DNA of 62,999 nt, counting the filler, from Octopus bimaculoides (Eukaryota): NCBI RefSeq assembly GCF_001194135.2. It is 4 parts of 4 records of this genome, joined end to end, with 100 filler letters (N's around TTAATTAATTAA, not from the genome) between each part and the next. Parts side by side here need not be neighbours in the genome. Positions count along the whole stretch, not along the records: positions 41,238 to 56,232 come from NW_026314114.1; 3 more parts are not named here. One strand, written 5' to 3'. The number at the start of each line of letters is the position of its first letter. Position 1 is the first letter of the stretch. Under the pieces are notes generated by a model that saw only the letters and a program-made list of their open reading frames with translations, searched no databases and was not told where the DNA came from. The position numbers were made by a program, and so were the translations under genes. Of the stretch, positions 49,502 through 60,878 are shown piece after piece.

Positions 49502-50260
49502 TAGGGTGAGTGAAAAGTAAGTAGGCATTAAAAATTGGTAATAAAATCCATATTCCTTTTACAAATTTATTAAAACAAATGATACATGTTCTTTATTAAA
49601 TGGGAAAACGAAAGTAAATAGTCATATTTCAACATAAGCACCAGTGGCATCAACCAGTTTAGTCAAACAGCCAAGGGTAGAATGAATAACGTTCTGAAGG
49701 ACGTTGTCTGGGATACCATTGAGAATCTCCTGAATCCATGTCTCCAAGTCCTCCAGTGTGCGAGGTTTTGTCTTGTACACCACTTTTGTGTAACCTCACA
49801 GGTAAAAATCACATGGAGTGAGATTTGGACTTCTTGGAGTTCTGGACATCTGGACTTCTACAGTCACAGCCTTCAGGTTTTAGCTCCTGCACATAATGGG
49901 ATTTTCACGGACAAAAACTCAGTTCTTTATTCAACACCGTACGTATTATGTGTTTTGTTAGTCCACTTTCATGAGCTGCTTGACTTGTTGATTTTTGCAG
50001 GCTGCAATTAAACATTTCCTTCACTGTTGTCATGTTCTCTGCTGATCGGGATGTGGTTGGACAGCCACTTCTTGCATTGTTCACAGAGCCAATGGTCATC
50101 AGCTTTGCATGACAACTTTTTATTGTCTCTGGACGTAGTGTTGCATGCTTACCTTTCAATGCACGCCACCATCTCTGAACTAAAAACAATGGAATTTCAC
50201 ACTTCATAGCATGCTCCTATCTTAGCTTGCTCCTGGACAGTCAAGCAACCAGCCATTTGG
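49502..50260 (-). mobile_element. Tc1/mariner (IS630-Tc1-mariner) transposase relic, internally deleted
   Basis: IGSVNNARSGCPTTSRS...QKSTSQAA (HTH region) joined to PRSPNLTPCDFYL*GY. TAGGGTG terminus in a TA context at about 49502; the other TIR was not found. Confidence 0.8.
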
Positions 50261-51289
50261 AAAATAAGAAATAAGACAATAAGAAAATCAAAAATGCCTT
50301 CCGGCAGCTCTATTACCACATTCAAAAGCATATTCAACATATTCAATTTTTCCTTCACAGTAAACTATTCATAAGTTCTGCCCATACTGACAATAATGGT
50401 GATGACAAATTTTTAAGTTTGCTTGACATTTTATAAGTGTGAAAGGGATTAAAATTTTGATACTCTATATCATAGGTTCCGTCAAGAATAGGCAGAAAAG
50501 AATTGTTTACATAATCAGTTTGAGTAAAGTTGATTGAGTAAAGTGCCATCCAAGCTGATGTTTATTGGTAATTAAATTTAATTTGCAATGCCTATGCATA
50601 TTTATCAGCTTTATTTTTGTTGGTAATTCTTATCAATAACTTTTCCTGTGATCATGACTTGAGAAGTCATACAGCAGTATACTAAAGATCAGACATAATC
50701 TCTTGTGGGCAAGAAATGTAAAATAAAGTTTATAATAAATACAAACACTTTGTAATTTAATAGCTTTCAATGTGATACCTGTTAGACAGAAATTATTTTT
50801 ATTTAATGAAAATTTAATAAAATCTAATTATAAGTGAAATTATGCTAAATACAACTAAATTGAAAACCTTTTTCCCCTGGCCATATTGGCAATTCTGAAA
50901 ACTTTTGGGTGCAAATTTTACATGAGTAGAAGCTTTTTTTAACAAATTTTATCCTGAAAATCACTTGCGTAAATTACACAGGTGCACAAATTACATGGGT
51001 TTTTATGGTAAATGTAACAAAAGCAAAGTTTGAAAGAAATATTAACCATTTTTCATTCTTTCTAGGGGTAAGCAAATAGGAGAAAAAGTTATGTTATACA
51101 ATGTAATTACAGCAGCTGAGTAGCATCATAGTTAAAAGAGTGATGGAGTGATGGATGTTAGGAAGATAAGATGTAGAGAATGCTTGATGAGGGAAGATGG
51201 GTTGAGGGAGAAGGGCACAGCATGTACAAGCATAACATAATGCTCTTAGTCCTCACTTTTGCTATGATGAATGTGTCTTCTCAATTACA

Positions 51290-51965
51290 GTGAGATGCTA
51301 ATTATCTTGTCTTTAGTCATCTCCTCCATGAGGCTCAACATTTTGAGATCAGTCTTCGTTACTTCATCTCATATCTTCCTGGGTCTCCCTCTTACAAATA
51401 TCCCATCCATAGCAAGTACTGAGTACATTGTATGGAATTTCTGGCTAAACCTTTCCTACTTATTATGCAGAGCTAATTATCTGATGGGAATAGAATCCTG
51501 TCTGTTTTCTTGCTTACTAGAATTTTGGTCTTTGATAAGTTAACTTTAAGATCTTTTGATTCCAGGTTTTGCTTCCACTCCTGGAATTTCTTCTCTGATT
51601 ATACTATTTGAACAAGGTCATCAGCATATAATAATTCCTCTGTTATGGCCTGGGGACTTGACGATCTCCTACATGTACTCTAAATTCATTGCTTTATTCA
51701 TTACTAACCCTCACCTTACTGAAAGTACTCCAGTACATGGCTTGTGTGGCTCTTTGTCCATAGGGTGAAGAAGTCTGTCAAAGGCTTTTCCCACTCAATG
51801 AATGCCAATTACAATGGCTTATTCTCAGCTAAATACTTGTCTTGCAGTTGACTTAGAAGGAAGATGGCATCACCAACCCTTCTCCCTAGCACAAAACCAA
51901 ACTGCAATGGAGCTATAATACTATTCATAACTTACATCACCTAGTTCGGCAATTTGATAGCTATA
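51290..51965 (-). mobile_element. RTE family 1, highly degraded RT fragment
   Basis: Colinear with 7900-9260, with internal deletions: QFGFV (AAAACCAAACTGCA), KAFD (GTCAAAGGCTTT) and YADD (AAGGTCATCAGCATA). Confidence 0.75.
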
Positions 51966-52029
51966 TAATCTTTTTTCTACCTAAAGCATCTCCTTTACCC
52001 TTGTAACAAGTGATTTATTTTTCCTAGCA

Positions 52030-52215
52030 CACCAACAAAATATTTGGCAGTATTTGTTCCAGCTTTACATTCTGAGTTCAAATTCTTTTAAGGCTAACTT
52101 TGCCTTTCATCCTTTTAGGATCAATGAAATCAATACCAGTCAACTACTAGGGTTGATGTAATCAACTTAGCCCCTCTCCTAAAATTGCTGACCTTATGCC
52201 AAAATGTGAAACTGT
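52030..52215 (+). mobile_element. SINE family B, degraded, upstream of the LPMO exon
   Basis: TTCTGAGTTCAAATTC...CTTTGCCTTTCATCC...CTTATGCCAAAATGTGAAAC. Confidence 0.65.
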
Positions 52216-52268
52216 TGTTGATTTTTATTAATTTCAATTTTTATTTTTTTTATTTCATATTGACTTAG

Positions 52269-52650
52269 GTGCAATATAAAAAAAATGGAGGTAAATGTGG
52301 CGTATGCGGAGATCCATATGATGGACCCCGTCCCAATGAAGTAAATGGAAAATATGCTACAGGAATCATTGTCCGAAATTACACAGAAGGCCAACAAGTC
52401 GAAGTACAGGTTCAATTGACAGCAAATCACAAAGGCTGGTTCATGTTTACATTATGTCCCAAGAAAAAATATTCTGACCCAGAACCTCTAGAATGTTTTG
52501 AGTCTCATCCCCTGCAAATAGCTGGAAAGAAGAACATGTACAAGTTTCCTATTAAAGCTGAAATGGGCTCAACAACAGTGAAAGTAAACCTTCAGTTACC
52601 TAAAGGACTTTCATGTCCATATTGTGTGTTTCGGTGGAAATACAATGCTG
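52269..52650 (+). CDS. AA15 lytic polysaccharide monooxygenase (chitin-binding type-4-like fold), internal exon
   Basis: acttag|GTG...GCTG|gtaagt. Encodes VQYKKNGGKCGVCGDPYDGPRPNEVNGKYATGIIVRNYTEGQ...LTANHKGWF...LPKGLSCPYCVFRWKYNA. NGGKCGxCGD, TANHxG and CxxCxxxWxY are AA15 hallmarks. Confidence 0.93.
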
Positions 52651-52850
52651 GTAAGTTAATTGGTTGGTTTTAATTTTTTGATATTGTTAGTTTTTTTCGA
52701 AGCTGAAGGAGAAGGTAAAGAAGCTGTGACAAGGGTTCTGAACATCTTCCCTTTAGAGGACTTTCATAAGGCCTTCACAAAGTGGCTGCAATGCTACAAC
52801 AAGAATCCTATTCTGATGGAGAGTAGAGTTTTGTACTTTTTAAATTAATC

Positions 52851-53031
52851 GTTGCCAGTACCGCCTGACTGGCCTTCGTGCCAGTGACACGTAAAAGCAC
52901 CCACTACACTCTCTGAGTGGTTGGCGTTAGGAAGGGCACCCAGCTGTAGAAACTCTGCTAAATCAGATTGGAGCCTGGTGTTGCCAGTCAAATCGTCCAA
53001 CCCATGCTAGCATGGAAAGCGGGCGTTAAAC

Positions 53032-53068
<37 letters not shown>
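52851..53068 (+). mobile_element. RTE family 1, 3' end inside the LPMO intron
   Basis: Near-consensus UTR with a long (GAT)n tail. Confidence 0.85.
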
Positions 53069-53070
<2 letters not shown>

Positions 53071-53340
53071 GGCACATGGTTTAGTGGTTAGGGTATTTGG
53101 CTCACAATTGTAAGGTATTGAGTTCAGTTCCCAGTAATGTGTTGTGTCCTTGAGCAAAACACTTTATTTCACATTACTGCAGTTCACTCAGCTGGCAACA
53201 ATAAGAACATGTATTTCAAAGGGCCAGCCTTGTCATATTCTGTGTCATGCTGAATATTTTTGAGAACTTCGTACACAAGCTTGTGAAGTACTCAACCACT
53301 TGCATGTTAATTTCACAAGCAGACTGTTCCGTTGATTTGA
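53069..53340 (+). mobile_element. SINE sharing the family C head and core
   Basis: TGGTTTAGTGG...GAGTTCAGTTCC...CCTTGAGCAAAACACTTTATT. The 3' body differs from 39241-39580. Confidence 0.6.
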
Positions 53341-53736
53341 AGTAACTTCAAAAATTTCACTTAAATCTGTACACTTAGTTAATTTCCCTAAAAATTTCTC
53401 ATTTACTTTTGCAACAGTTTTGTTTTTTTTCTCTTGTTAACAGTTTTTTTTCTGGTTCTTTCAATACTGGCTCTTTCGTTTACTGACAAGTTGCACTTCA
53501 AACCATACAATTCTTTATTTTCCATAAAAATTTCTTATTTATTTTCTACCCGTCATATTAAGAAATATAATTTCTGTTACCCAGTTATTTTCATTGTTTA
53601 CTATTTTCCGCAACAAGTAATAGGTACAAGATTTGAAAAATGCAATAATATTGTTCAAATCAAAAGATGACTCAGCATCTCTCTGTACTTTAAATATTGA
53701 TATTTTTATTCTAATAAAAGCAAGTGTTAAAAATTT

Positions 53737-53890
53737 GTGTGGTAAGTAGCTTGCTTACCAACCACATGGTTCCGGGTTCATTCCCACTGCGTGGCACTTT
53801 GGGTAAGTGTCTTCCACTATAGCCTCGGGCCGACCAAAGCCTTGTGAGTGGATTTGGTAGACGGAAACTGAAAGAAGCCTGTCGTATATA

Positions 53891-53933
<43 letters not shown>

Positions 53934-54135
53934 GTGTGTGTGTCTGTGTTTGTCCCCCCAACATCGCTTGACAACCGATGGTGGTGTGTTTGGGTCCTCG
54001 TAACTTAGCGGTTCGGCAAAAGAGACCGATAGAATAAGTACTAGGCATCCAAAGAATAAGTCCTGGGGTCGAATTGCTCGACTAAAGGCGCGCTGCAGCA
54101 TGGCCGCAGTCAAATGACTGAAACATTAAAAGAAA
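53737..54135 (+). mobile_element. SINE family A inside the LPMO intron
   Basis: Near-consensus copy with a central (TA)n. Confidence 0.88.
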
Positions 54136-54504
54136 AGAGAATAGTTATTACAGGGTAAGGTGTTACTTGAGAGATATTTGGCTTTTATTTCTAGCCAGAT
54201 GTGTGACCACATAAAGATTTCCTCACTGCTGCTTTCCACGGTAGCAATTTCCTACTAGATGCGTCTGAGCAATCAAGACAAAAATGACCTTGTGATTGGG
54301 ATACAAACATGACTACAGTTATATCACAACTGTCTACTATTTGATTGAAAGTCGATGCTGTATTGACTGGAGATGGAGAGACAGCTGTATTGATTTGACT
54401 GGCTGCAACTAATAGGACAGGTGGACCTGAAGATCACATGGGTAGGAGGCAAGCTTCTTACCACACAGCTATGCTTGCACCTATACCTTATTCTTTCTTT
54501 TATT

Positions 54505-54910
54505 TTTTCACCTGTTTCAGTTATTTGACTGCGGCCATACTGGGGCACCACCTTAAAGGAGTTTTAGTTGAAGAAATCGGCTCCAGGACTTATTCTTTGT
54601 AAGCCTAGTGCTTATTATATCAGTCTCTTTTGCTGAACTGCTAGATTACAGGGATGTAAACACACCAACATCGGTTGTCAAGTGAAGGTGGGAAGGGGAC
54701 AAACACAGACACAAAGACACACTCAGATAAATATGTATATATATATGTGTATGATGGGCTTCTTTCAGTTTCTGTCTACCAAATTCCCTCACAAGGCTTT
54801 GGTCAGCCCGACACTATAGTAGAAGACACTTGTCCAAGGTGCCACATAGAGGGACTGAACCCAGAACCATGTAGTAGGAAAGTAAGCTTCTTACCACACA
54901 GCCATGGGTG
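54505..54910 (-). mobile_element. SINE family A inside the LPMO intron
   Basis: Full copy in inverted orientation to 53737-54135. Confidence 0.85.
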
Positions 54911-55149
54911 TGTCTATGTTAAAAAAGAAAGTAAAACATTTAATAATAGAGTCCCATTTACACAGTATCAAAAATATTTTAGGGGTGGCCACAGCTGAAA
55001 TGCTTCAATCTTTCCTTTATATTGAGTCCACCAAATGATTGAGACAAGATTAGTGATTCAATGATGCATACACTCCTTGTTTGGTTCCTTTCAATGTAGC
55101 TGATTCAGAGAGTGGGAGAGAAACAGCCCCAGTATTTAACAGATACTTT

Positions 55150-55372
55150 ACCGCCTGACTGGCCTTCATGCCAGTGGCACGTAAAAGCACCCACTACACT
55201 CTCTGAGTGGTGGTTGTTAGGAAGGGCATCCAGCTGTAGAAACTCTGCCAAATCAGAGTGGAGCCTGGTGTAGCCATCCGGTTTCACCAGTCCTCAGTCA
55301 AATCGTCCAACCCATGCTAGCATGGAAAGCGGACGTTAAACGACGATGATGATGATGATGATGATGATGAAG
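55150..55372 (+). mobile_element. RTE family 1, 3' end inside the LPMO intron
   Basis: Near-consensus UTR with a (GAT)n tail. Confidence 0.85.
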
Positions 55373-55632
55373 GATGACAGGCAAAATCAACCTAAGAATG
55401 CAGGCAGCAAGAGTAAACACTGAAGGTGTTCTATTGACTCTGTTAATGGGTTGTTTTCAATCATAAGTCTTTTTAATCAGAGCTAACTCAGATCTAAACA
55501 GCACGTAAGTAAAAATCAGGTTTAACCACTCCTTTTATTAATGTAAATCCTTATGTAAGTACACATAAAATAAACCTGTTGTTATATTGTGCTTTCCTGA
55601 AATGATTATCAGTAATTTCTATTTTTAAACAG

Positions 55633-55841
55633 GTAATAGCTGGGGTGTTGATTCCGTTACAAACAAGGGATGCATAGGATGCGGTAACCAAGAACAATTC
55701 TATGGTTGTGCTGACGTCACCATTTTCCAAGATCCTAACAAACCATCTTCAGCTTCAAAACTTACTTGGAATAAACACTATTTGTGGTTGGTTCTAACTG
55801 CTGCTCTTGTCACTGGTTCAGTTTATTCTGCAGATATCTGA
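55633..55841 (+). CDS. AA15 LPMO, terminal exon with hydrophobic C-terminal tail
   Basis: aaacag|GT completes Gly in phase, then NSWGVDSVTNKGCIGCGNQEQFYGCADVTIFQDPNKPSSASKLTWNKHYLWLVLTAALVTGSVYSADI-TGA. GCG-x-x-E-x-F-x-x-CADV is the AA15 C-terminal motif. Confidence 0.93.
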
Positions 55842-55843
55842 AA

Positions 55844-55849
55844 AATAAA
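55844..55849 (+). promoter_or_regulatory. Candidate polyadenylation signal of the LPMO gene
   Basis: AATAAA 3 bp after the stop codon. It may be chance in AT-rich DNA. Confidence 0.2.
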
Positions 55850-56232
55850 CTATTGCTGACTTTTTCATGAACCACATTCCATAGACTTACAAATAATCAC
55901 AACTTAATCTTTACGTGTATGGGCTGTATGTGCATGCGTATGTATGTATGTATGTATGTATGTATGTATGTATGTATGTGTGTATGTATCTATATATATA
56001 TATATATATATAATCATAAATATATAGGGATTGACAGTAACCTGCTTCTCCAACATACTGAGAATTCAGAAATAGCAGTCAAAGAACTACTGATTTCAAA
56101 TTCCTCACGTGGTATTGATGTTCACATGGTCAAAATTAACGTGAGTTATTTAGACATTAACAAATTTATTAGAATATTTAGCTGAAGATCAGAATAGAGT
56201 ATTATGTACTCTTAACTGTGAAACAATTGTAC

Positions 56233-59951: not shown

Positions 59952-60878
59952 ACACCGGTAAGATATCGTAGTCAAGGCAGCAGTACTTACACTTAGTCTG
60001 ATTAAAATTATAATTGTTAAATTTAAAAAGAAATTATTTCATCTCCATTAATAAAAAACTTAGAACTCGATGTGTAATTTCATTAATTTTAATATTCAAT
60101 AAAATATTTGCTACTTCCAAGTTCAACATGCTCCAGTTATATTGAACCCATGTGCTATGAGCCCACCTGCACAATACATTAAATATAATGTCATAAAACC
60201 AGTATGAATTTTGCTTTTACTCATTCGTGAGCAGAGAATGTGTGAGCATGTAAGTATGATACGCAGCGGGTGTGTAGAGATATTGTGTTTCATATGACTT
60301 TATAAAATAAAAAATCTGAAAAGCACACACACAGATACACGGACACATACACACACGCACATACATATAGAAATATATACATTCAAATTCTTTTATTCTA
60401 TTTTTTTATTTTCAGATTCAGTCTGAAGCTGTAGTCATGCTGCAGCACCGTCATTACCACTCTCATTTGTATATTTTAGACTCATTTCCCGGTCTTGTCC
60501 GCGGATCTAATCCTGATAAAGTAGTGAGTTGGACATATCTGCTTGAATATATATATATAACAATAAGAAAATGGAGGGGAATATGTGGTACTCATCAACT
60601 TGCAGACAATGTATTATGTAAATTTACCTGTTTATTTTTCAACTAAGAGGACAGGACAATAAAACCAATATACAAACACATATGACATATTTATGTCATA
60701 TCAGTAATAAAAATTAAAAAGGACATCTAGTGTCCGAAGAAGGGAATAGTAATTGGGTATCCCTCCCCGGCAGTATATTGGATATATATTATTCCTTAGT
60801 GGGTTGGATTTACAACCCCTAACTTTCTTGGATTATATATACATATAATATATTCCCTATATGTATTTATATATGTGT

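What the first reader, a model, noticed from the sequence alone, without database searches (positions are those of the whole stretch)
52269..55841. AA15 copper LPMO with a predicted GPI-anchor tail in a probable cephalopod
Seen: two in-phase exons encode most of an AA15 domain. It has the second His of the copper brace (TANH), the E-x-F pair in EQFYGCADV (second-sphere Glu with Phe rather than Tyr at the axial position), the surface Trp in NSWG, nine Cys and an N-glycosylation sequon (NYT). After the domain come a short linker, small residues (PSSAS), a spacer and a terminal hydrophobic run (YLWLVLTAALVTGSVY), with no cytoplasmic tail. Known: AA15s oxidatively cleave chitin or cellulose in arthropods and oomycetes, and this C-terminal layout is typical of GPI attachment signals. 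Inference: a cell-surface-tethered oxidative chitin-remodelling enzyme, for example in epithelia making beak, radula, sucker or gut cuticle. I cannot tell from the sequence whether this form is already described in molluscs.
Basis: partly seen in the sequence, partly recalled or inferred. Interest (0 to 1): 0.75.

Follow-up and report, generated by a model that had tools for sequence, protein, structure and literature searches.

The report
Octopus AA15 chitin oxidase, lipid-anchor tail
These are the last two coding exons of an octopus gene for a copper enzyme (AA15 LPMO) that most likely cuts chitin and is probably held on the cell surface by a lipid anchor; it is a real but ordinary member of a family already reported in molluscs, octopods included.

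Summary
Window 52269-52650 and 55633-55841 (+ strand) are two exons with canonical splice sites. Joined in phase 1, they give a 196-aa open frame ending at TGA.

- **Family:** the frame matches Pfam LPMO_10 (E 1.8e-17) and the Thermobia AA15 crystal structure 5MSZ (E 5e-34). A predicted structure finds 5MSZ first.
- **Active site:** the second brace His, the Ala two residues before it, the surface Trp and an axial Phe all align to the active-site positions of characterised AA15s. The Phe is the chitin-type residue.
- **Species:** the nearest protein is Octopus sinensis LOC115214156 (89% identical, 260 aa, "uncharacterized"). The piece is collinear with that gene's intron 1 through exon 3.
- **Missing part:** exon 1, which carries the signal peptide and His1, lies outside the piece. 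His1 cannot be checked here.
- **Constraint:** dN/dS against O. sinensis is 0.27, so the gene is under purifying selection.
- **Tail:** PSSAS, a 7-8 residue spacer, a 16-residue moderately hydrophobic run, then SADI. This fits a GPI signal by rule-based inspection. No dedicated predictor was available.
- **How common:** 63 of 116 relatives carry such a tail.

The literature already reports AA15 in cephalopods and GPI anchors in AA15. This is a new member of a known kind, of low interest.

The parts
41238..52268 (+). 3' part of intron 1 of the AA15 gene. It consists of repeat-rich sequence with two N gaps (42549-42976 and 46164-46392). It contains no exon 1.
   Evidence: This stretch is collinear with O. 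sinensis locus L001 positions 43.2-60.1 kb, which lie inside that gene's ~50-kb intron 1. A tblastn search with four full-length relatives finds no match to the signal-peptide/His1 exon.
52269..52650 (+). Coding exon 2 of 3. It encodes VQYKKNGGKC...WKYNA(G), the middle of the AA15 catalytic domain. It holds six Cys, the NYT sequon (52377-52385) and the second brace His in TANH (52428-52430).
   Evidence: The splice sites are canonical. O. sinensis exon 2 has the same boundaries. Matches to Pfam and to PDB 5MSZ cover this exon.
52651..55632 (+). Intron 2, 2,982 nt, running from gtaagt to the acceptor cag. It contains SINE-like repeats and microsatellites.
   Evidence: The orthologous O. sinensis intron is 12,075 nt.
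55633..55841 (+). Terminal coding exon. It encodes the end of the AA15 domain, then a short stalk and the C-terminal hydrophobic signal, and ends at TGA (55839-55841). Landmarks in the domain are NSWG Trp131 (55641-55643), three Cys, Glu148 (55692-55694) and axial Phe150 (55698-55700).
   Evidence: The O. sinensis RefSeq model uses the same terminal exon.
55746..55838 (+). Candidate GPI-attachment signal. The omega candidates are Ser166 or Ser167 within PSSAS. A spacer (S)KLTWNKH follows. The hydrophobic run YLWLVLTAALVTGSVY spans 55779-55826, and the protein ends with SADI.
   Evidence: Rule-based scan with classical GPI signals as controls. AlphaFold2 models residues 175-193 as a lone helix of lower confidence, outside the domain. 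The layout is conserved in O. sinensis, Argonauta and P0003.
55844..55849 (+). An AATAAA hexamer 3 nt after the stop codon. It is a possible polyadenylation signal, but this was not verified.
   Evidence: Read directly from the sequence.

Best explanation
The window holds coding exons 2 and 3 of a three-exon octopod gene. It is the orthologue of Octopus sinensis LOC115214156 and encodes a family-AA15 lytic polysaccharide monooxygenase (LPMO).

**What the whole protein looks like (by orthology).** It has a signal peptide of about 31 residues. Cleavage of that peptide exposes His1 (HGRLWEP...). A single catalytic domain of about 190 residues follows, with ten Cys forming five disulfides. Then comes a stalk of roughly ten residues and a C-terminal GPI-attachment signal.

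**What is shown here:**
- The gene structure.
- AA15 membership, by sequence and by predicted fold.
- The second brace His, with Ala two residues before it.
- The surface Trp and the axial Phe.
- Nine of the ten conserved Cys.
- Purifying selection on the coding sequence.

**What is inferred:**
- Copper is held by His1 plus His54.
- With a reductant and O2 or H2O2, the enzyme cleaves crystalline chitin oxidatively. The axial Phe and surface Trp match the chitin-specific TdAA15B and the moulting enzyme TcLPMO15-1.
- In the ER, GPI transamidase cuts at a Ser of PSSAS and attaches a lipid anchor, which tethers the enzyme to the outer face of the cell.
- The last beta-strand runs from Phe150, beside the copper, to residue 159. 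The stalk should therefore leave the pole opposite the copper face, so the active face would point away from the membrane towards extracellular chitin.

**What is not determined.** The site of action is unknown. It could be cuticle-forming epithelia or the gut.

**Confidence by step:** AA15 membership about 0.97; chitin as the substrate about 0.65; a GPI anchor rather than another fate of the tail about 0.6.
For: - **Reading frame and splice sites:**
- **Pfam:** LPMO_10, E 1.8e-17 over residues 4-156.
- **Solved structure:** 5MSZ (TdAA15A), E 5.1e-34, with residue-by-residue alignment of His91, Ala89, Tyr166 and Tyr184.
- **Predicted structure:** AlphaFold2 mean pLDDT 82 and a beta-sandwich fold. 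Foldseek ranks 5MSZ first (E 1.2e-13, TM 0.69), followed by AA13, AA10, AA11 and AA9 LPMOs.
- **Conservation:** H54, Q147, E148, F150 and six Cys are invariant across 50 aligned relatives; two more Cys are nearly invariant.
- **Orthologue:** P0001 is 89% identical and starts MDKQRV...HYVQA|HGRLWEP, that is a signal peptide followed directly by His.
- **Gene structure:** three exons and collinearity with the O. sinensis locus.
- **Selection:** dN/dS is 0.265, with dS 0.19.
- **Tail:** small residues at omega and omega+2, a 7-8 residue spacer and a 16-residue run. Mean hydropathy is 1.85 over 13 residues and 1.51 over 19 residues, close to the values for DAF. No basic residue follows the run.
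- **Layout in relatives:** the same layout with unrelated sequence occurs in Argonauta and in P0003. It occurs in 63 of 116 relatives, 50 of which have 6 or fewer residues after the hydrophobic core.
- **Transcript evidence:** a polyadenylated transcript in a relative encodes the same full architecture.
- **Literature:** axial Phe marks chitin-specific AA15 (PMC5823890). The Trp/Phe pair is found in the chitin-active moulting enzyme LPMO15-1 (PMC9156745). GPI anchors are listed among AA15 C-termini (PMC8615602).
Against: - Exon 1 is not in the piece. His1, the signal peptide and the tenth Cys are known only from the orthologue.
- No dedicated GPI predictor (NetGPI, PredGPI, big-PI) could be run. 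The positive-control GPI signals were written from my memory.
- The tail ends in SADI, which includes one charged residue.
- AlphaFold2 draws the tail as a 19-residue helix, which would also suit a membrane span.
- Insect AA15s with a similar tail (LPMO15-2) are described as transmembrane proteins (PMC9156745).
- No expression or activity data exist for any molluscan AA15 in the literature I could search.
Confidence: 0.6

Rival explanations
1. The enzyme is the same AA15, but the C-terminal hydrophobic run is a true single-pass membrane span. The protein would be type I with a four-residue cytoplasmic tail, not a cleaved GPI signal.
For: AlphaFold2 models residues 175-193 as one helix. The uncharged stretch between His176 and Asp195 is 18 residues long. 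Insect group II LPMO15-2 proteins are annotated with a C-terminal transmembrane span (PMC9156745). Several relatives carry Arg/Lys after the hydrophobic core.
Against: The best 19-residue hydropathy is only 1.51, below the usual 1.6 threshold for a membrane span and close to the value for the GPI signal of DAF. No positive residue follows the run; the tail is SADI here and SANI in O. sinensis. A set of small residues sits at the right distance upstream for an omega site. Among tail-type relatives, 37 of 63 have no Lys/Arg after the core and many end right at it.
Confidence: 0.22
2. The protein is a surface-tethered copper-binding or copper-handling protein rather than a polysaccharide-cleaving enzyme, by analogy with the GPI-anchored fungal LPMO-like X325/Bim1 proteins.
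For: It shares an architecture with X325: a histidine-brace domain with a GPI-type tail (PMC8615602, PMC10952591). No activity data exist for any molluscan AA15.
Against: The sequence and fold matches are to AA15 and then to catalytic AA13, AA10, AA11 and AA9 enzymes. No X325 structure appears in the sequence search at E<=1 or in the top 50 fold matches. The surface Trp, the Ala, the Glu-x-Phe motif and the brace His are those of active chitin-cleaving AA15s and are invariant or nearly so (PMC9156745).
Confidence: 0.07
3. The gene is a decaying copy or an incomplete gene in this species. Under this reading, exons 2-3 survive but there is no functional exon 1.
For: Exon 1 is not present in the 11 kb upstream of exon 2. 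No identical protein from this species is in the protein database.
Against: The orthologous exon 1 lies about 50 kb upstream in O. sinensis. The piece begins at a point equivalent to about 33 kb downstream of that exon, so its absence here is expected. Both exons are open with canonical splice sites. dN/dS is 0.265.
Confidence: 0.04

Closest known systems
Octopus sinensis LOC115214156 (RefSeq 'uncharacterized protein', 260 aa; P0001)
   Same: It is the orthologue. It is 89% identical over all 196 residues and has the same exon boundaries, the same terminal exon and the same tail layout. The flanking intron DNA is collinear at mostly 88-93% identity.
   Different: It comes from a different species. 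It has a two-residue indel in a loop. Its intron 2 is 12,075 nt against 2,982 nt here. It has extra N-glycosylation sequons (NNT, NLS, NKT).
TdAA15A and TdAA15B from Thermobia domestica (PDB 5MSZ; founding AA15 enzymes, PMC5823890)
   Same: Same family and fold. The brace His, Ala, Glu and the cysteines align. Like TdAA15B, which is chitin-specific, this protein has an axial Phe.
   Different: Identity to TdAA15A is about 38%. TdAA15A has an axial Tyr and a surface Tyr166 where this protein has Phe and Trp. The Thermobia enzymes are soluble gut enzymes made of the catalytic domain only, with no C-terminal tail.
Insect LPMO15-1 (group I; required for cuticle chitin turnover at the moult, PMC9156745)
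   Same: Same active-site signature: Ala/His, the surface Trp (W188 in TcLPMO15-1) and the axial Phe (F206). The likely substrate, chitin, is also the same.
   Different: LPMO15-1 carries a C-terminal stretch of about 120 residues with two six-Cys repeats and no hydrophobic tail. The window protein lacks that motif. Octopods have a separate paralogue with it (P0110).
Insect LPMO15-2 (group II, PMC9156745)
   Same: Same architecture: signal peptide, AA15 domain and a C-terminal hydrophobic segment that tethers the protein to the membrane.
   Different: Orthology was not tested here. The arthropod relatives that this search recovered are of the Cys-rich type. The insect tail is described as a transmembrane span, and its function is unknown.
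GPI-anchored LPMOs and LPMO-like proteins of fungi (some AA9, AA14 and AA16; X325/Bim1; PMC8615602, PMC10952591)
   Same: A histidine-brace domain displayed on the cell surface through a C-terminal GPI signal.
   Different: These are different families from a different kingdom. They have long Ser/Thr/Pro-rich linkers, where this protein has a stalk of about ten residues. X325 is not a polysaccharide-cleaving enzyme.

Membership tests
AA15 LPMO (CAZy auxiliary activity family 15) | Significant sequence similarity to the AA15 catalytic domain (Pfam LPMO_10 and characterised AA15 enzymes) | tested here: met
   Pfam PF03067 at E 1.8e-17, 65 bits against a cut-off of 23. 5MSZ TdAA15A at E 5.1e-34 over 159 residues.
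AA15 LPMO (CAZy auxiliary activity family 15) | N-terminal His1 exposed directly by signal-peptide cleavage (first half of the copper histidine brace) | not testable with these tools
   Exon 1 lies outside the piece. In the O. sinensis orthologue the sequence reads ...FHYVQA|HGRLWEP. Among the listed relatives, 77 of 120 start with Met and carry an HG-type motif 15-60 residues in.
AA15 LPMO (CAZy auxiliary activity family 15) | Second brace histidine (His91 of TdAA15A) with Ala two residues before it | tested here: met
   The window's TANH aligns with QAPH of 5MSZ: His54 with His91 and Ala52 with Ala89. H54 is invariant and A52 nearly invariant in 50 sequences.
AA15 LPMO (CAZy auxiliary activity family 15) | Axial aromatic residue (Tyr184 position; Phe in chitin-specific members) | tested here: met
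   Phe150 aligns with Tyr184. The residue at this position is Phe in all 116 relatives that carry the motif. The link between Phe and chitin specificity comes from PMC5823890 and PMC9156745.
AA15 LPMO (CAZy auxiliary activity family 15) | Ten conserved cysteines forming five disulfides | tested here: inconclusive
   Nine Cys are in the fragment. Six are invariant and two nearly invariant. The tenth is expected in exon 1 (CGG in the orthologue), which is not in the piece.
AA15 LPMO (CAZy auxiliary activity family 15) | LPMO beta-sandwich fold | tested here: met
   AlphaFold2 mean pLDDT 82, with blocks over residues 31-160 averaging 82-97. Foldseek top hit 5MSZ, E 1.2e-13, TM 0.69.
AA15 LPMO (CAZy auxiliary activity family 15) | Copper-dependent oxidative cleavage of chitin or cellulose | not testable with these tools
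   This needs recombinant enzyme and product analysis.
GPI-anchored protein | N-terminal ER signal peptide | not testable with these tools
   It is not in the piece. The orthologue P0001 has a hydrophobic N-terminus ending in VQA just before His. No signal-peptide predictor was available.
GPI-anchored protein | Omega site with small residues at omega and omega+2, followed by a 5-10 residue polar spacer | tested here: met
   S166-S-A or S167-A-S, followed by the spacer (S)KLTWNKH. This is a rule-based scan only.
GPI-anchored protein | C-terminal moderately hydrophobic run of about 12-20 residues with no cytoplasmic domain | tested here: met
   The run is YLWLVLTAALVTGSVY followed by SADI. Hydropathy over 13 residues is 1.85 and over 19 residues is 1.51, within the range of the six classical GPI signals used as controls, which I wrote from memory.
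GPI-anchored protein | Positive call by a trained predictor, or experimental release by PI-PLC | not testable with these tools
   NetGPI, PredGPI and big-PI are not available here, and no experiment was possible.
Insect-type group I LPMO15-1 | C-terminal stretch of about 120 residues with two six-Cys repeats | tested here: not met
   Only 40 residues follow the CADV motif and none is Cys. The motif is present in other relatives, including the octopod paralogue P0110.
X325 / Bim1 LPMO-like copper proteins | Sequence or fold similarity to X325 | tested here: not met
   No X325 entry appears in the PDB sequence search at E<=1 or among the 50 best fold matches.

The most novel reading that the evidence does not exclude
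Cephalopods may have a minimal, short-stalk form of the membrane-tethered AA15. Its C-terminal extension of 35-46 residues is the shortest among the 63 tail-type relatives, whose median is 75. After GPI processing, only about ten residues would separate the domain from the lipid. The copper face would then sit a few nanometres above the apical membrane, pointing outwards. The enzyme would act on chitin as it is extruded and organised in beak, radula, sucker lining, stylet or gut cuticle. That would be a role in building or patterning chitin rather than in degrading it, which has not been shown for any animal LPMO.
Probability: 0.15. Interest if true: 0.55.

Novelty: new member of a known kind. 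Interest (0 to 1): 0.2.

Why it matters
Its importance is modest. It adds one correctly delimited gene fragment to a family already known to occur in octopods, and the orthologue is already in RefSeq as an "uncharacterized protein".

Two points could be useful. First, about half of the molluscan AA15s recovered here carry a GPI-like tail. Second, no molluscan AA15 has been studied functionally in the literature I could search. A surface-tethered chitin oxidase in animals that build beaks, radulae and sucker linings from chitin is therefore a reasonable target for experiment.

The finding does not change any current concept.

Tried and rejected
- **Exon 1 search.** I searched the whole piece for the signal-peptide/His1 exon with tblastn, using four full-length relatives, word size 2 and E<=10. 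Only noise came back. Collinearity with O. sinensis explains why.
- **Pseudogene or gene fragment.** I considered this and rejected it on the open frames, the canonical splice sites and dN/dS 0.265.
- **Read-through of the exon 2 donor.** It stops after seven codons (NAGKLIGWF*) and would remove the Trp and the Glu-x-Phe motif. It is not a plausible product.
- **Transposase-like ORFs.** Pfam scans of three such ORFs (49622-50207 minus strand; 52660-52848 plus strand) gave nothing significant.
- **RNA genes.** The tRNA scan and the Rfam scan of the piece found nothing.
- **Literature.** My first cephalopod query was badly posed and returned only cephalopod papers. The repeat and the searches for AA15 with GPI, mollusc, anchor and LPMO15 found no functional study of a molluscan or cephalopod AA15. 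They did find statements that the family occurs there and that some AA15s carry GPI anchors.
- **Second-sphere Glu.** I could not confirm from the AA15 structure paper that Glu182 of TdAA15A is a second-sphere residue. That role rests on analogy with AA10 enzymes, from my own knowledge.
- **Orthology to insect group II LPMO15-2.** Not tested, because named sequences could not be fetched.
Full report
**1. The observation**

Reading window 52000-56232 and translating it confirms two exons on the + strand.
- Exon A is 52269-52650. It is preceded by ttgacttag and followed by gtaagt.
- Exon B is 55633-55841. It is preceded by a pyrimidine-rich tract ending in cag and ends in TGA at 55839-55841.
- The two join in phase 1 to give one 196-aa frame. 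The other two frames are full of stops.

The only correction is that four residues (SADI) follow the hydrophobic run.

**2. Family**

- The frame matches Pfam LPMO_10 at E 1.8e-17, 65 bits against a cut-off of 23.
- It matches the only solved AA15, Thermobia domestica TdAA15A (5MSZ), at E 5.1e-34 over 159 residues.
- In that alignment His54 lies on His91 (second brace His), Ala52 on Ala89, Trp131 on Tyr166, Glu148 on Glu182 and Phe150 on the axial Tyr184.
- The structure paper names His1, His91, Ala89, Tyr184 and the surface Tyr166/Tyr24 as the active-site and substrate-face residues. It also reports that Phe-type AA15s such as TdAA15B are chitin-specific (PMC5823890).
- The insect moulting enzyme LPMO15-1 has exactly the Trp/Phe combination seen here (PMC9156745).
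- Across 50 aligned relatives, H54, Q147, E148, F150 and six Cys are invariant, and two more Cys are nearly so.
- An AlphaFold2 model built on that alignment has mean pLDDT 82. Blocks over residues 31-160 average 82-97, and the fold is a beta-sandwich.
- Foldseek ranks 5MSZ first (E 1.2e-13, TM 0.69), followed by AA13, AA10, AA11 and AA9 LPMOs.

The second-sphere role of the Glu is my inference from AA10 enzymes. The AA15 paper does not discuss it.

**3. Whose gene, and where is the rest?**

- The best protein hit is Octopus sinensis LOC115214156 (P0001, 260 aa, 89% identity, full coverage). Next is the Argonauta hians protein of the same name (60%). All other named hits near the top are molluscan.
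- P0001 begins MDKQRVLASLRTLILIFYFLCISRTFHYVQA|HGRLWEPVARSSMWRKHYGTPTNYQDNELYCGGVT and then continues VQYKKNGGKC..., which is exactly where the window's exon A starts.
- The O. sinensis gene spans 62.8 kb. It has three coding exons: exon 1 at L001 10001 to about 10199, exon 2 at 60103-60478, and exon 3 at 72554-72762.
- The piece 41238-56232 is collinear with L001 from about 43.2 to 72.9 kb, at mostly 88-93% DNA identity.
- The piece therefore starts inside intron 1, at a point equivalent to about 33 kb downstream of exon 1.
- Consistently, tblastn with four full-length relatives finds no exon 1 anywhere in the piece.

His1 and the signal peptide therefore cannot be examined in this window. 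The source is an octopod other than O. sinensis, and its protein is not in the database.

**4. Is the gene alive?**

Both exons are open and have canonical splice sites. Against O. sinensis, dS is 0.19, dN is 0.05 and dN/dS is 0.265 over 194 codons. This indicates purifying selection. A Logan contig (SRR31864755) carrying relative P0003 (64% identical) has an uninterrupted 247-codon CDS and ends in a run of 22 A. It is therefore a polyadenylated transcript encoding a signal peptide, His1, the AA15 domain and a short hydrophobic tail.

**5. The tail**

After the CADV motif only 40 residues remain.
- A rule-based scan finds omega candidates Ser166 (S-S-A) and Ser167 (S-A-S). A spacer of 7-8 residues follows, then the run YLWLVLTAALVTGSVY, then SADI.
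- Hydropathy of the run is 1.85 over 13 residues and 1.51 over 19 residues. That is below the usual 1.6 threshold for a membrane span and very close to the GPI signal of DAF. It lies within the range of six classical GPI signals that I wrote from memory as controls.
- No basic residue follows the run.
- O. sinensis keeps the same layout. Argonauta and P0003 keep the layout with unrelated sequence. That pattern is what GPI signals typically show.
- Among 116 relatives with a recognisable domain end, 63 have a hydrophobic C-terminal tail. Of those, 50 have 6 or fewer residues after the core, and 37 have no Lys/Arg after it.
- Sixteen others have the Cys-rich motif of the insect LPMO15-1 type.
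- The three cephalopod-type proteins have the shortest extensions, 35-46 residues against a median of 75.
- AlphaFold2 draws residues 175-193 as a lone helix at pLDDT about 57-74. This does not discriminate between a GPI signal and a transmembrane span.

I could not run NetGPI, PredGPI or big-PI, so GPI attachment remains a well-motivated prediction. I put it at about 0.6, against about 0.22 for a membrane span with a four-residue tail.

**6. Mechanism**

Shown:
- AA15 membership.
- The brace His with Ala two residues before it.
- The surface Trp and the axial Phe.
- Nine of the ten conserved Cys.
- Purifying selection.

Inferred:
- The ER signal peptide exposes His1.
- His1 and His54 hold copper.
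- With a reductant and O2 or H2O2, the enzyme oxidatively cleaves chitin chains.
- GPI transamidase replaces the last 29 or 30 residues with a lipid anchor.
- The last strand (148-159) runs from Phe150, next to the copper, to the far end of the sandwich. The stalk of about ten residues should therefore leave the pole opposite the copper face, so the active face would point outwards.

Which tissue uses the enzyme is unknown.

**7. Comparison with what is known**

- AA15 was reported in molluscs when the family was founded (PMC5823890).
- A later review lists cephalopods and 'octopodes' explicitly (PMC10952591).
- A survey of 27,060 LPMO sequences lists GPI anchors among AA15 C-termini (PMC8615602).
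- Insect group II LPMO15-2 has a C-terminal membrane segment (PMC9156745).
- A snail genome survey counts eight AA15 genes (PMC10295696).
- I found no functional study of a molluscan AA15 in the searchable library.

The finding is therefore a correct reading of an ordinary orthologue: a new member of a known kind.

**8. Verdict**

The caveats are heuristic GPI evidence only, His1 not visible in the piece, and an untested tissue role. Interest is 0.2. The most novel reading not excluded is a short-stalk, outward-facing surface enzyme acting on nascent chitin in cephalopod cuticular structures (probability about 0.15).

Noticed in passing
window 41266-41455, 43108-43304, 43525-43731, 44667-44853, 45958-46163, 53736-54140, 54727-54923: This is a SINE-like interspersed repeat family present in both orientations, with copies 74-94% alike. 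The copy at 53736-54140 also matches more than a dozen places in the 83-kb O. sinensis locus. ARAGORN and Rfam recognise nothing in it.
   Followed up: partly
window 47427-47667, 48030-48194 (inverted), 52850-53071, 55140-55381: This is a second interspersed repeat family, ending in a (GAT)n/(ATG)n microsatellite tail. Two copies lie in the same orientation inside intron 2.
   Followed up: partly
window 46901-47191 and 47247-47436: There are two short tandem arrays in intron 1: a 97-nt unit repeated three times (66-91% alike) and a 95-nt unit repeated twice (88% alike).
   Followed up: no
window 49622-50207 (- strand) and 52660-52848 (+ strand): To my eye, short ORFs here resemble decayed pieces of a Tc1/mariner-type transposase (helix-turn-helix and C-terminal parts). 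Pfam gives no significant match, so this remains an unverified impression.
   Followed up: partly
window 52651-55632 compared with L001 60479-72553: Intron 2 is 2,982 nt here against 12,075 nt in O. sinensis. The whole 15-kb piece corresponds to about 29.7 kb of the O. sinensis locus. Intron size has therefore changed greatly between two octopods, presumably through repeat gain or loss.
   Followed up: no
window 42549-42976 and 46164-46392: Two assembly gaps (runs of N, 428 and 229 nt) lie inside intron 1. ORFs reported across them are artefacts.
   Followed up: yes
window 55844-55849: An AATAAA hexamer starts 3 nt after the stop codon. It could be a polyadenylation signal giving a very short 3' UTR. 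This was not tested.
   Followed up: no
relatives P0110 (Argonauta hians, named after LOC115222289) and P0099: Octopods also have a second AA15 paralogue with a long Cys-rich C-terminal extension instead of a hydrophobic tail. Both C-terminal architectures therefore coexist in one lineage, as insect groups I and II do.
   Followed up: partly
L002 (Logan SRR31864755 contig, 1830 nt): This polyadenylated transcript encodes P0003. It carries about 1 kb of AT-rich sequence (31% GC) upstream of the start codon. That could be a long 5' UTR or retained intron sequence.
   Followed up: no
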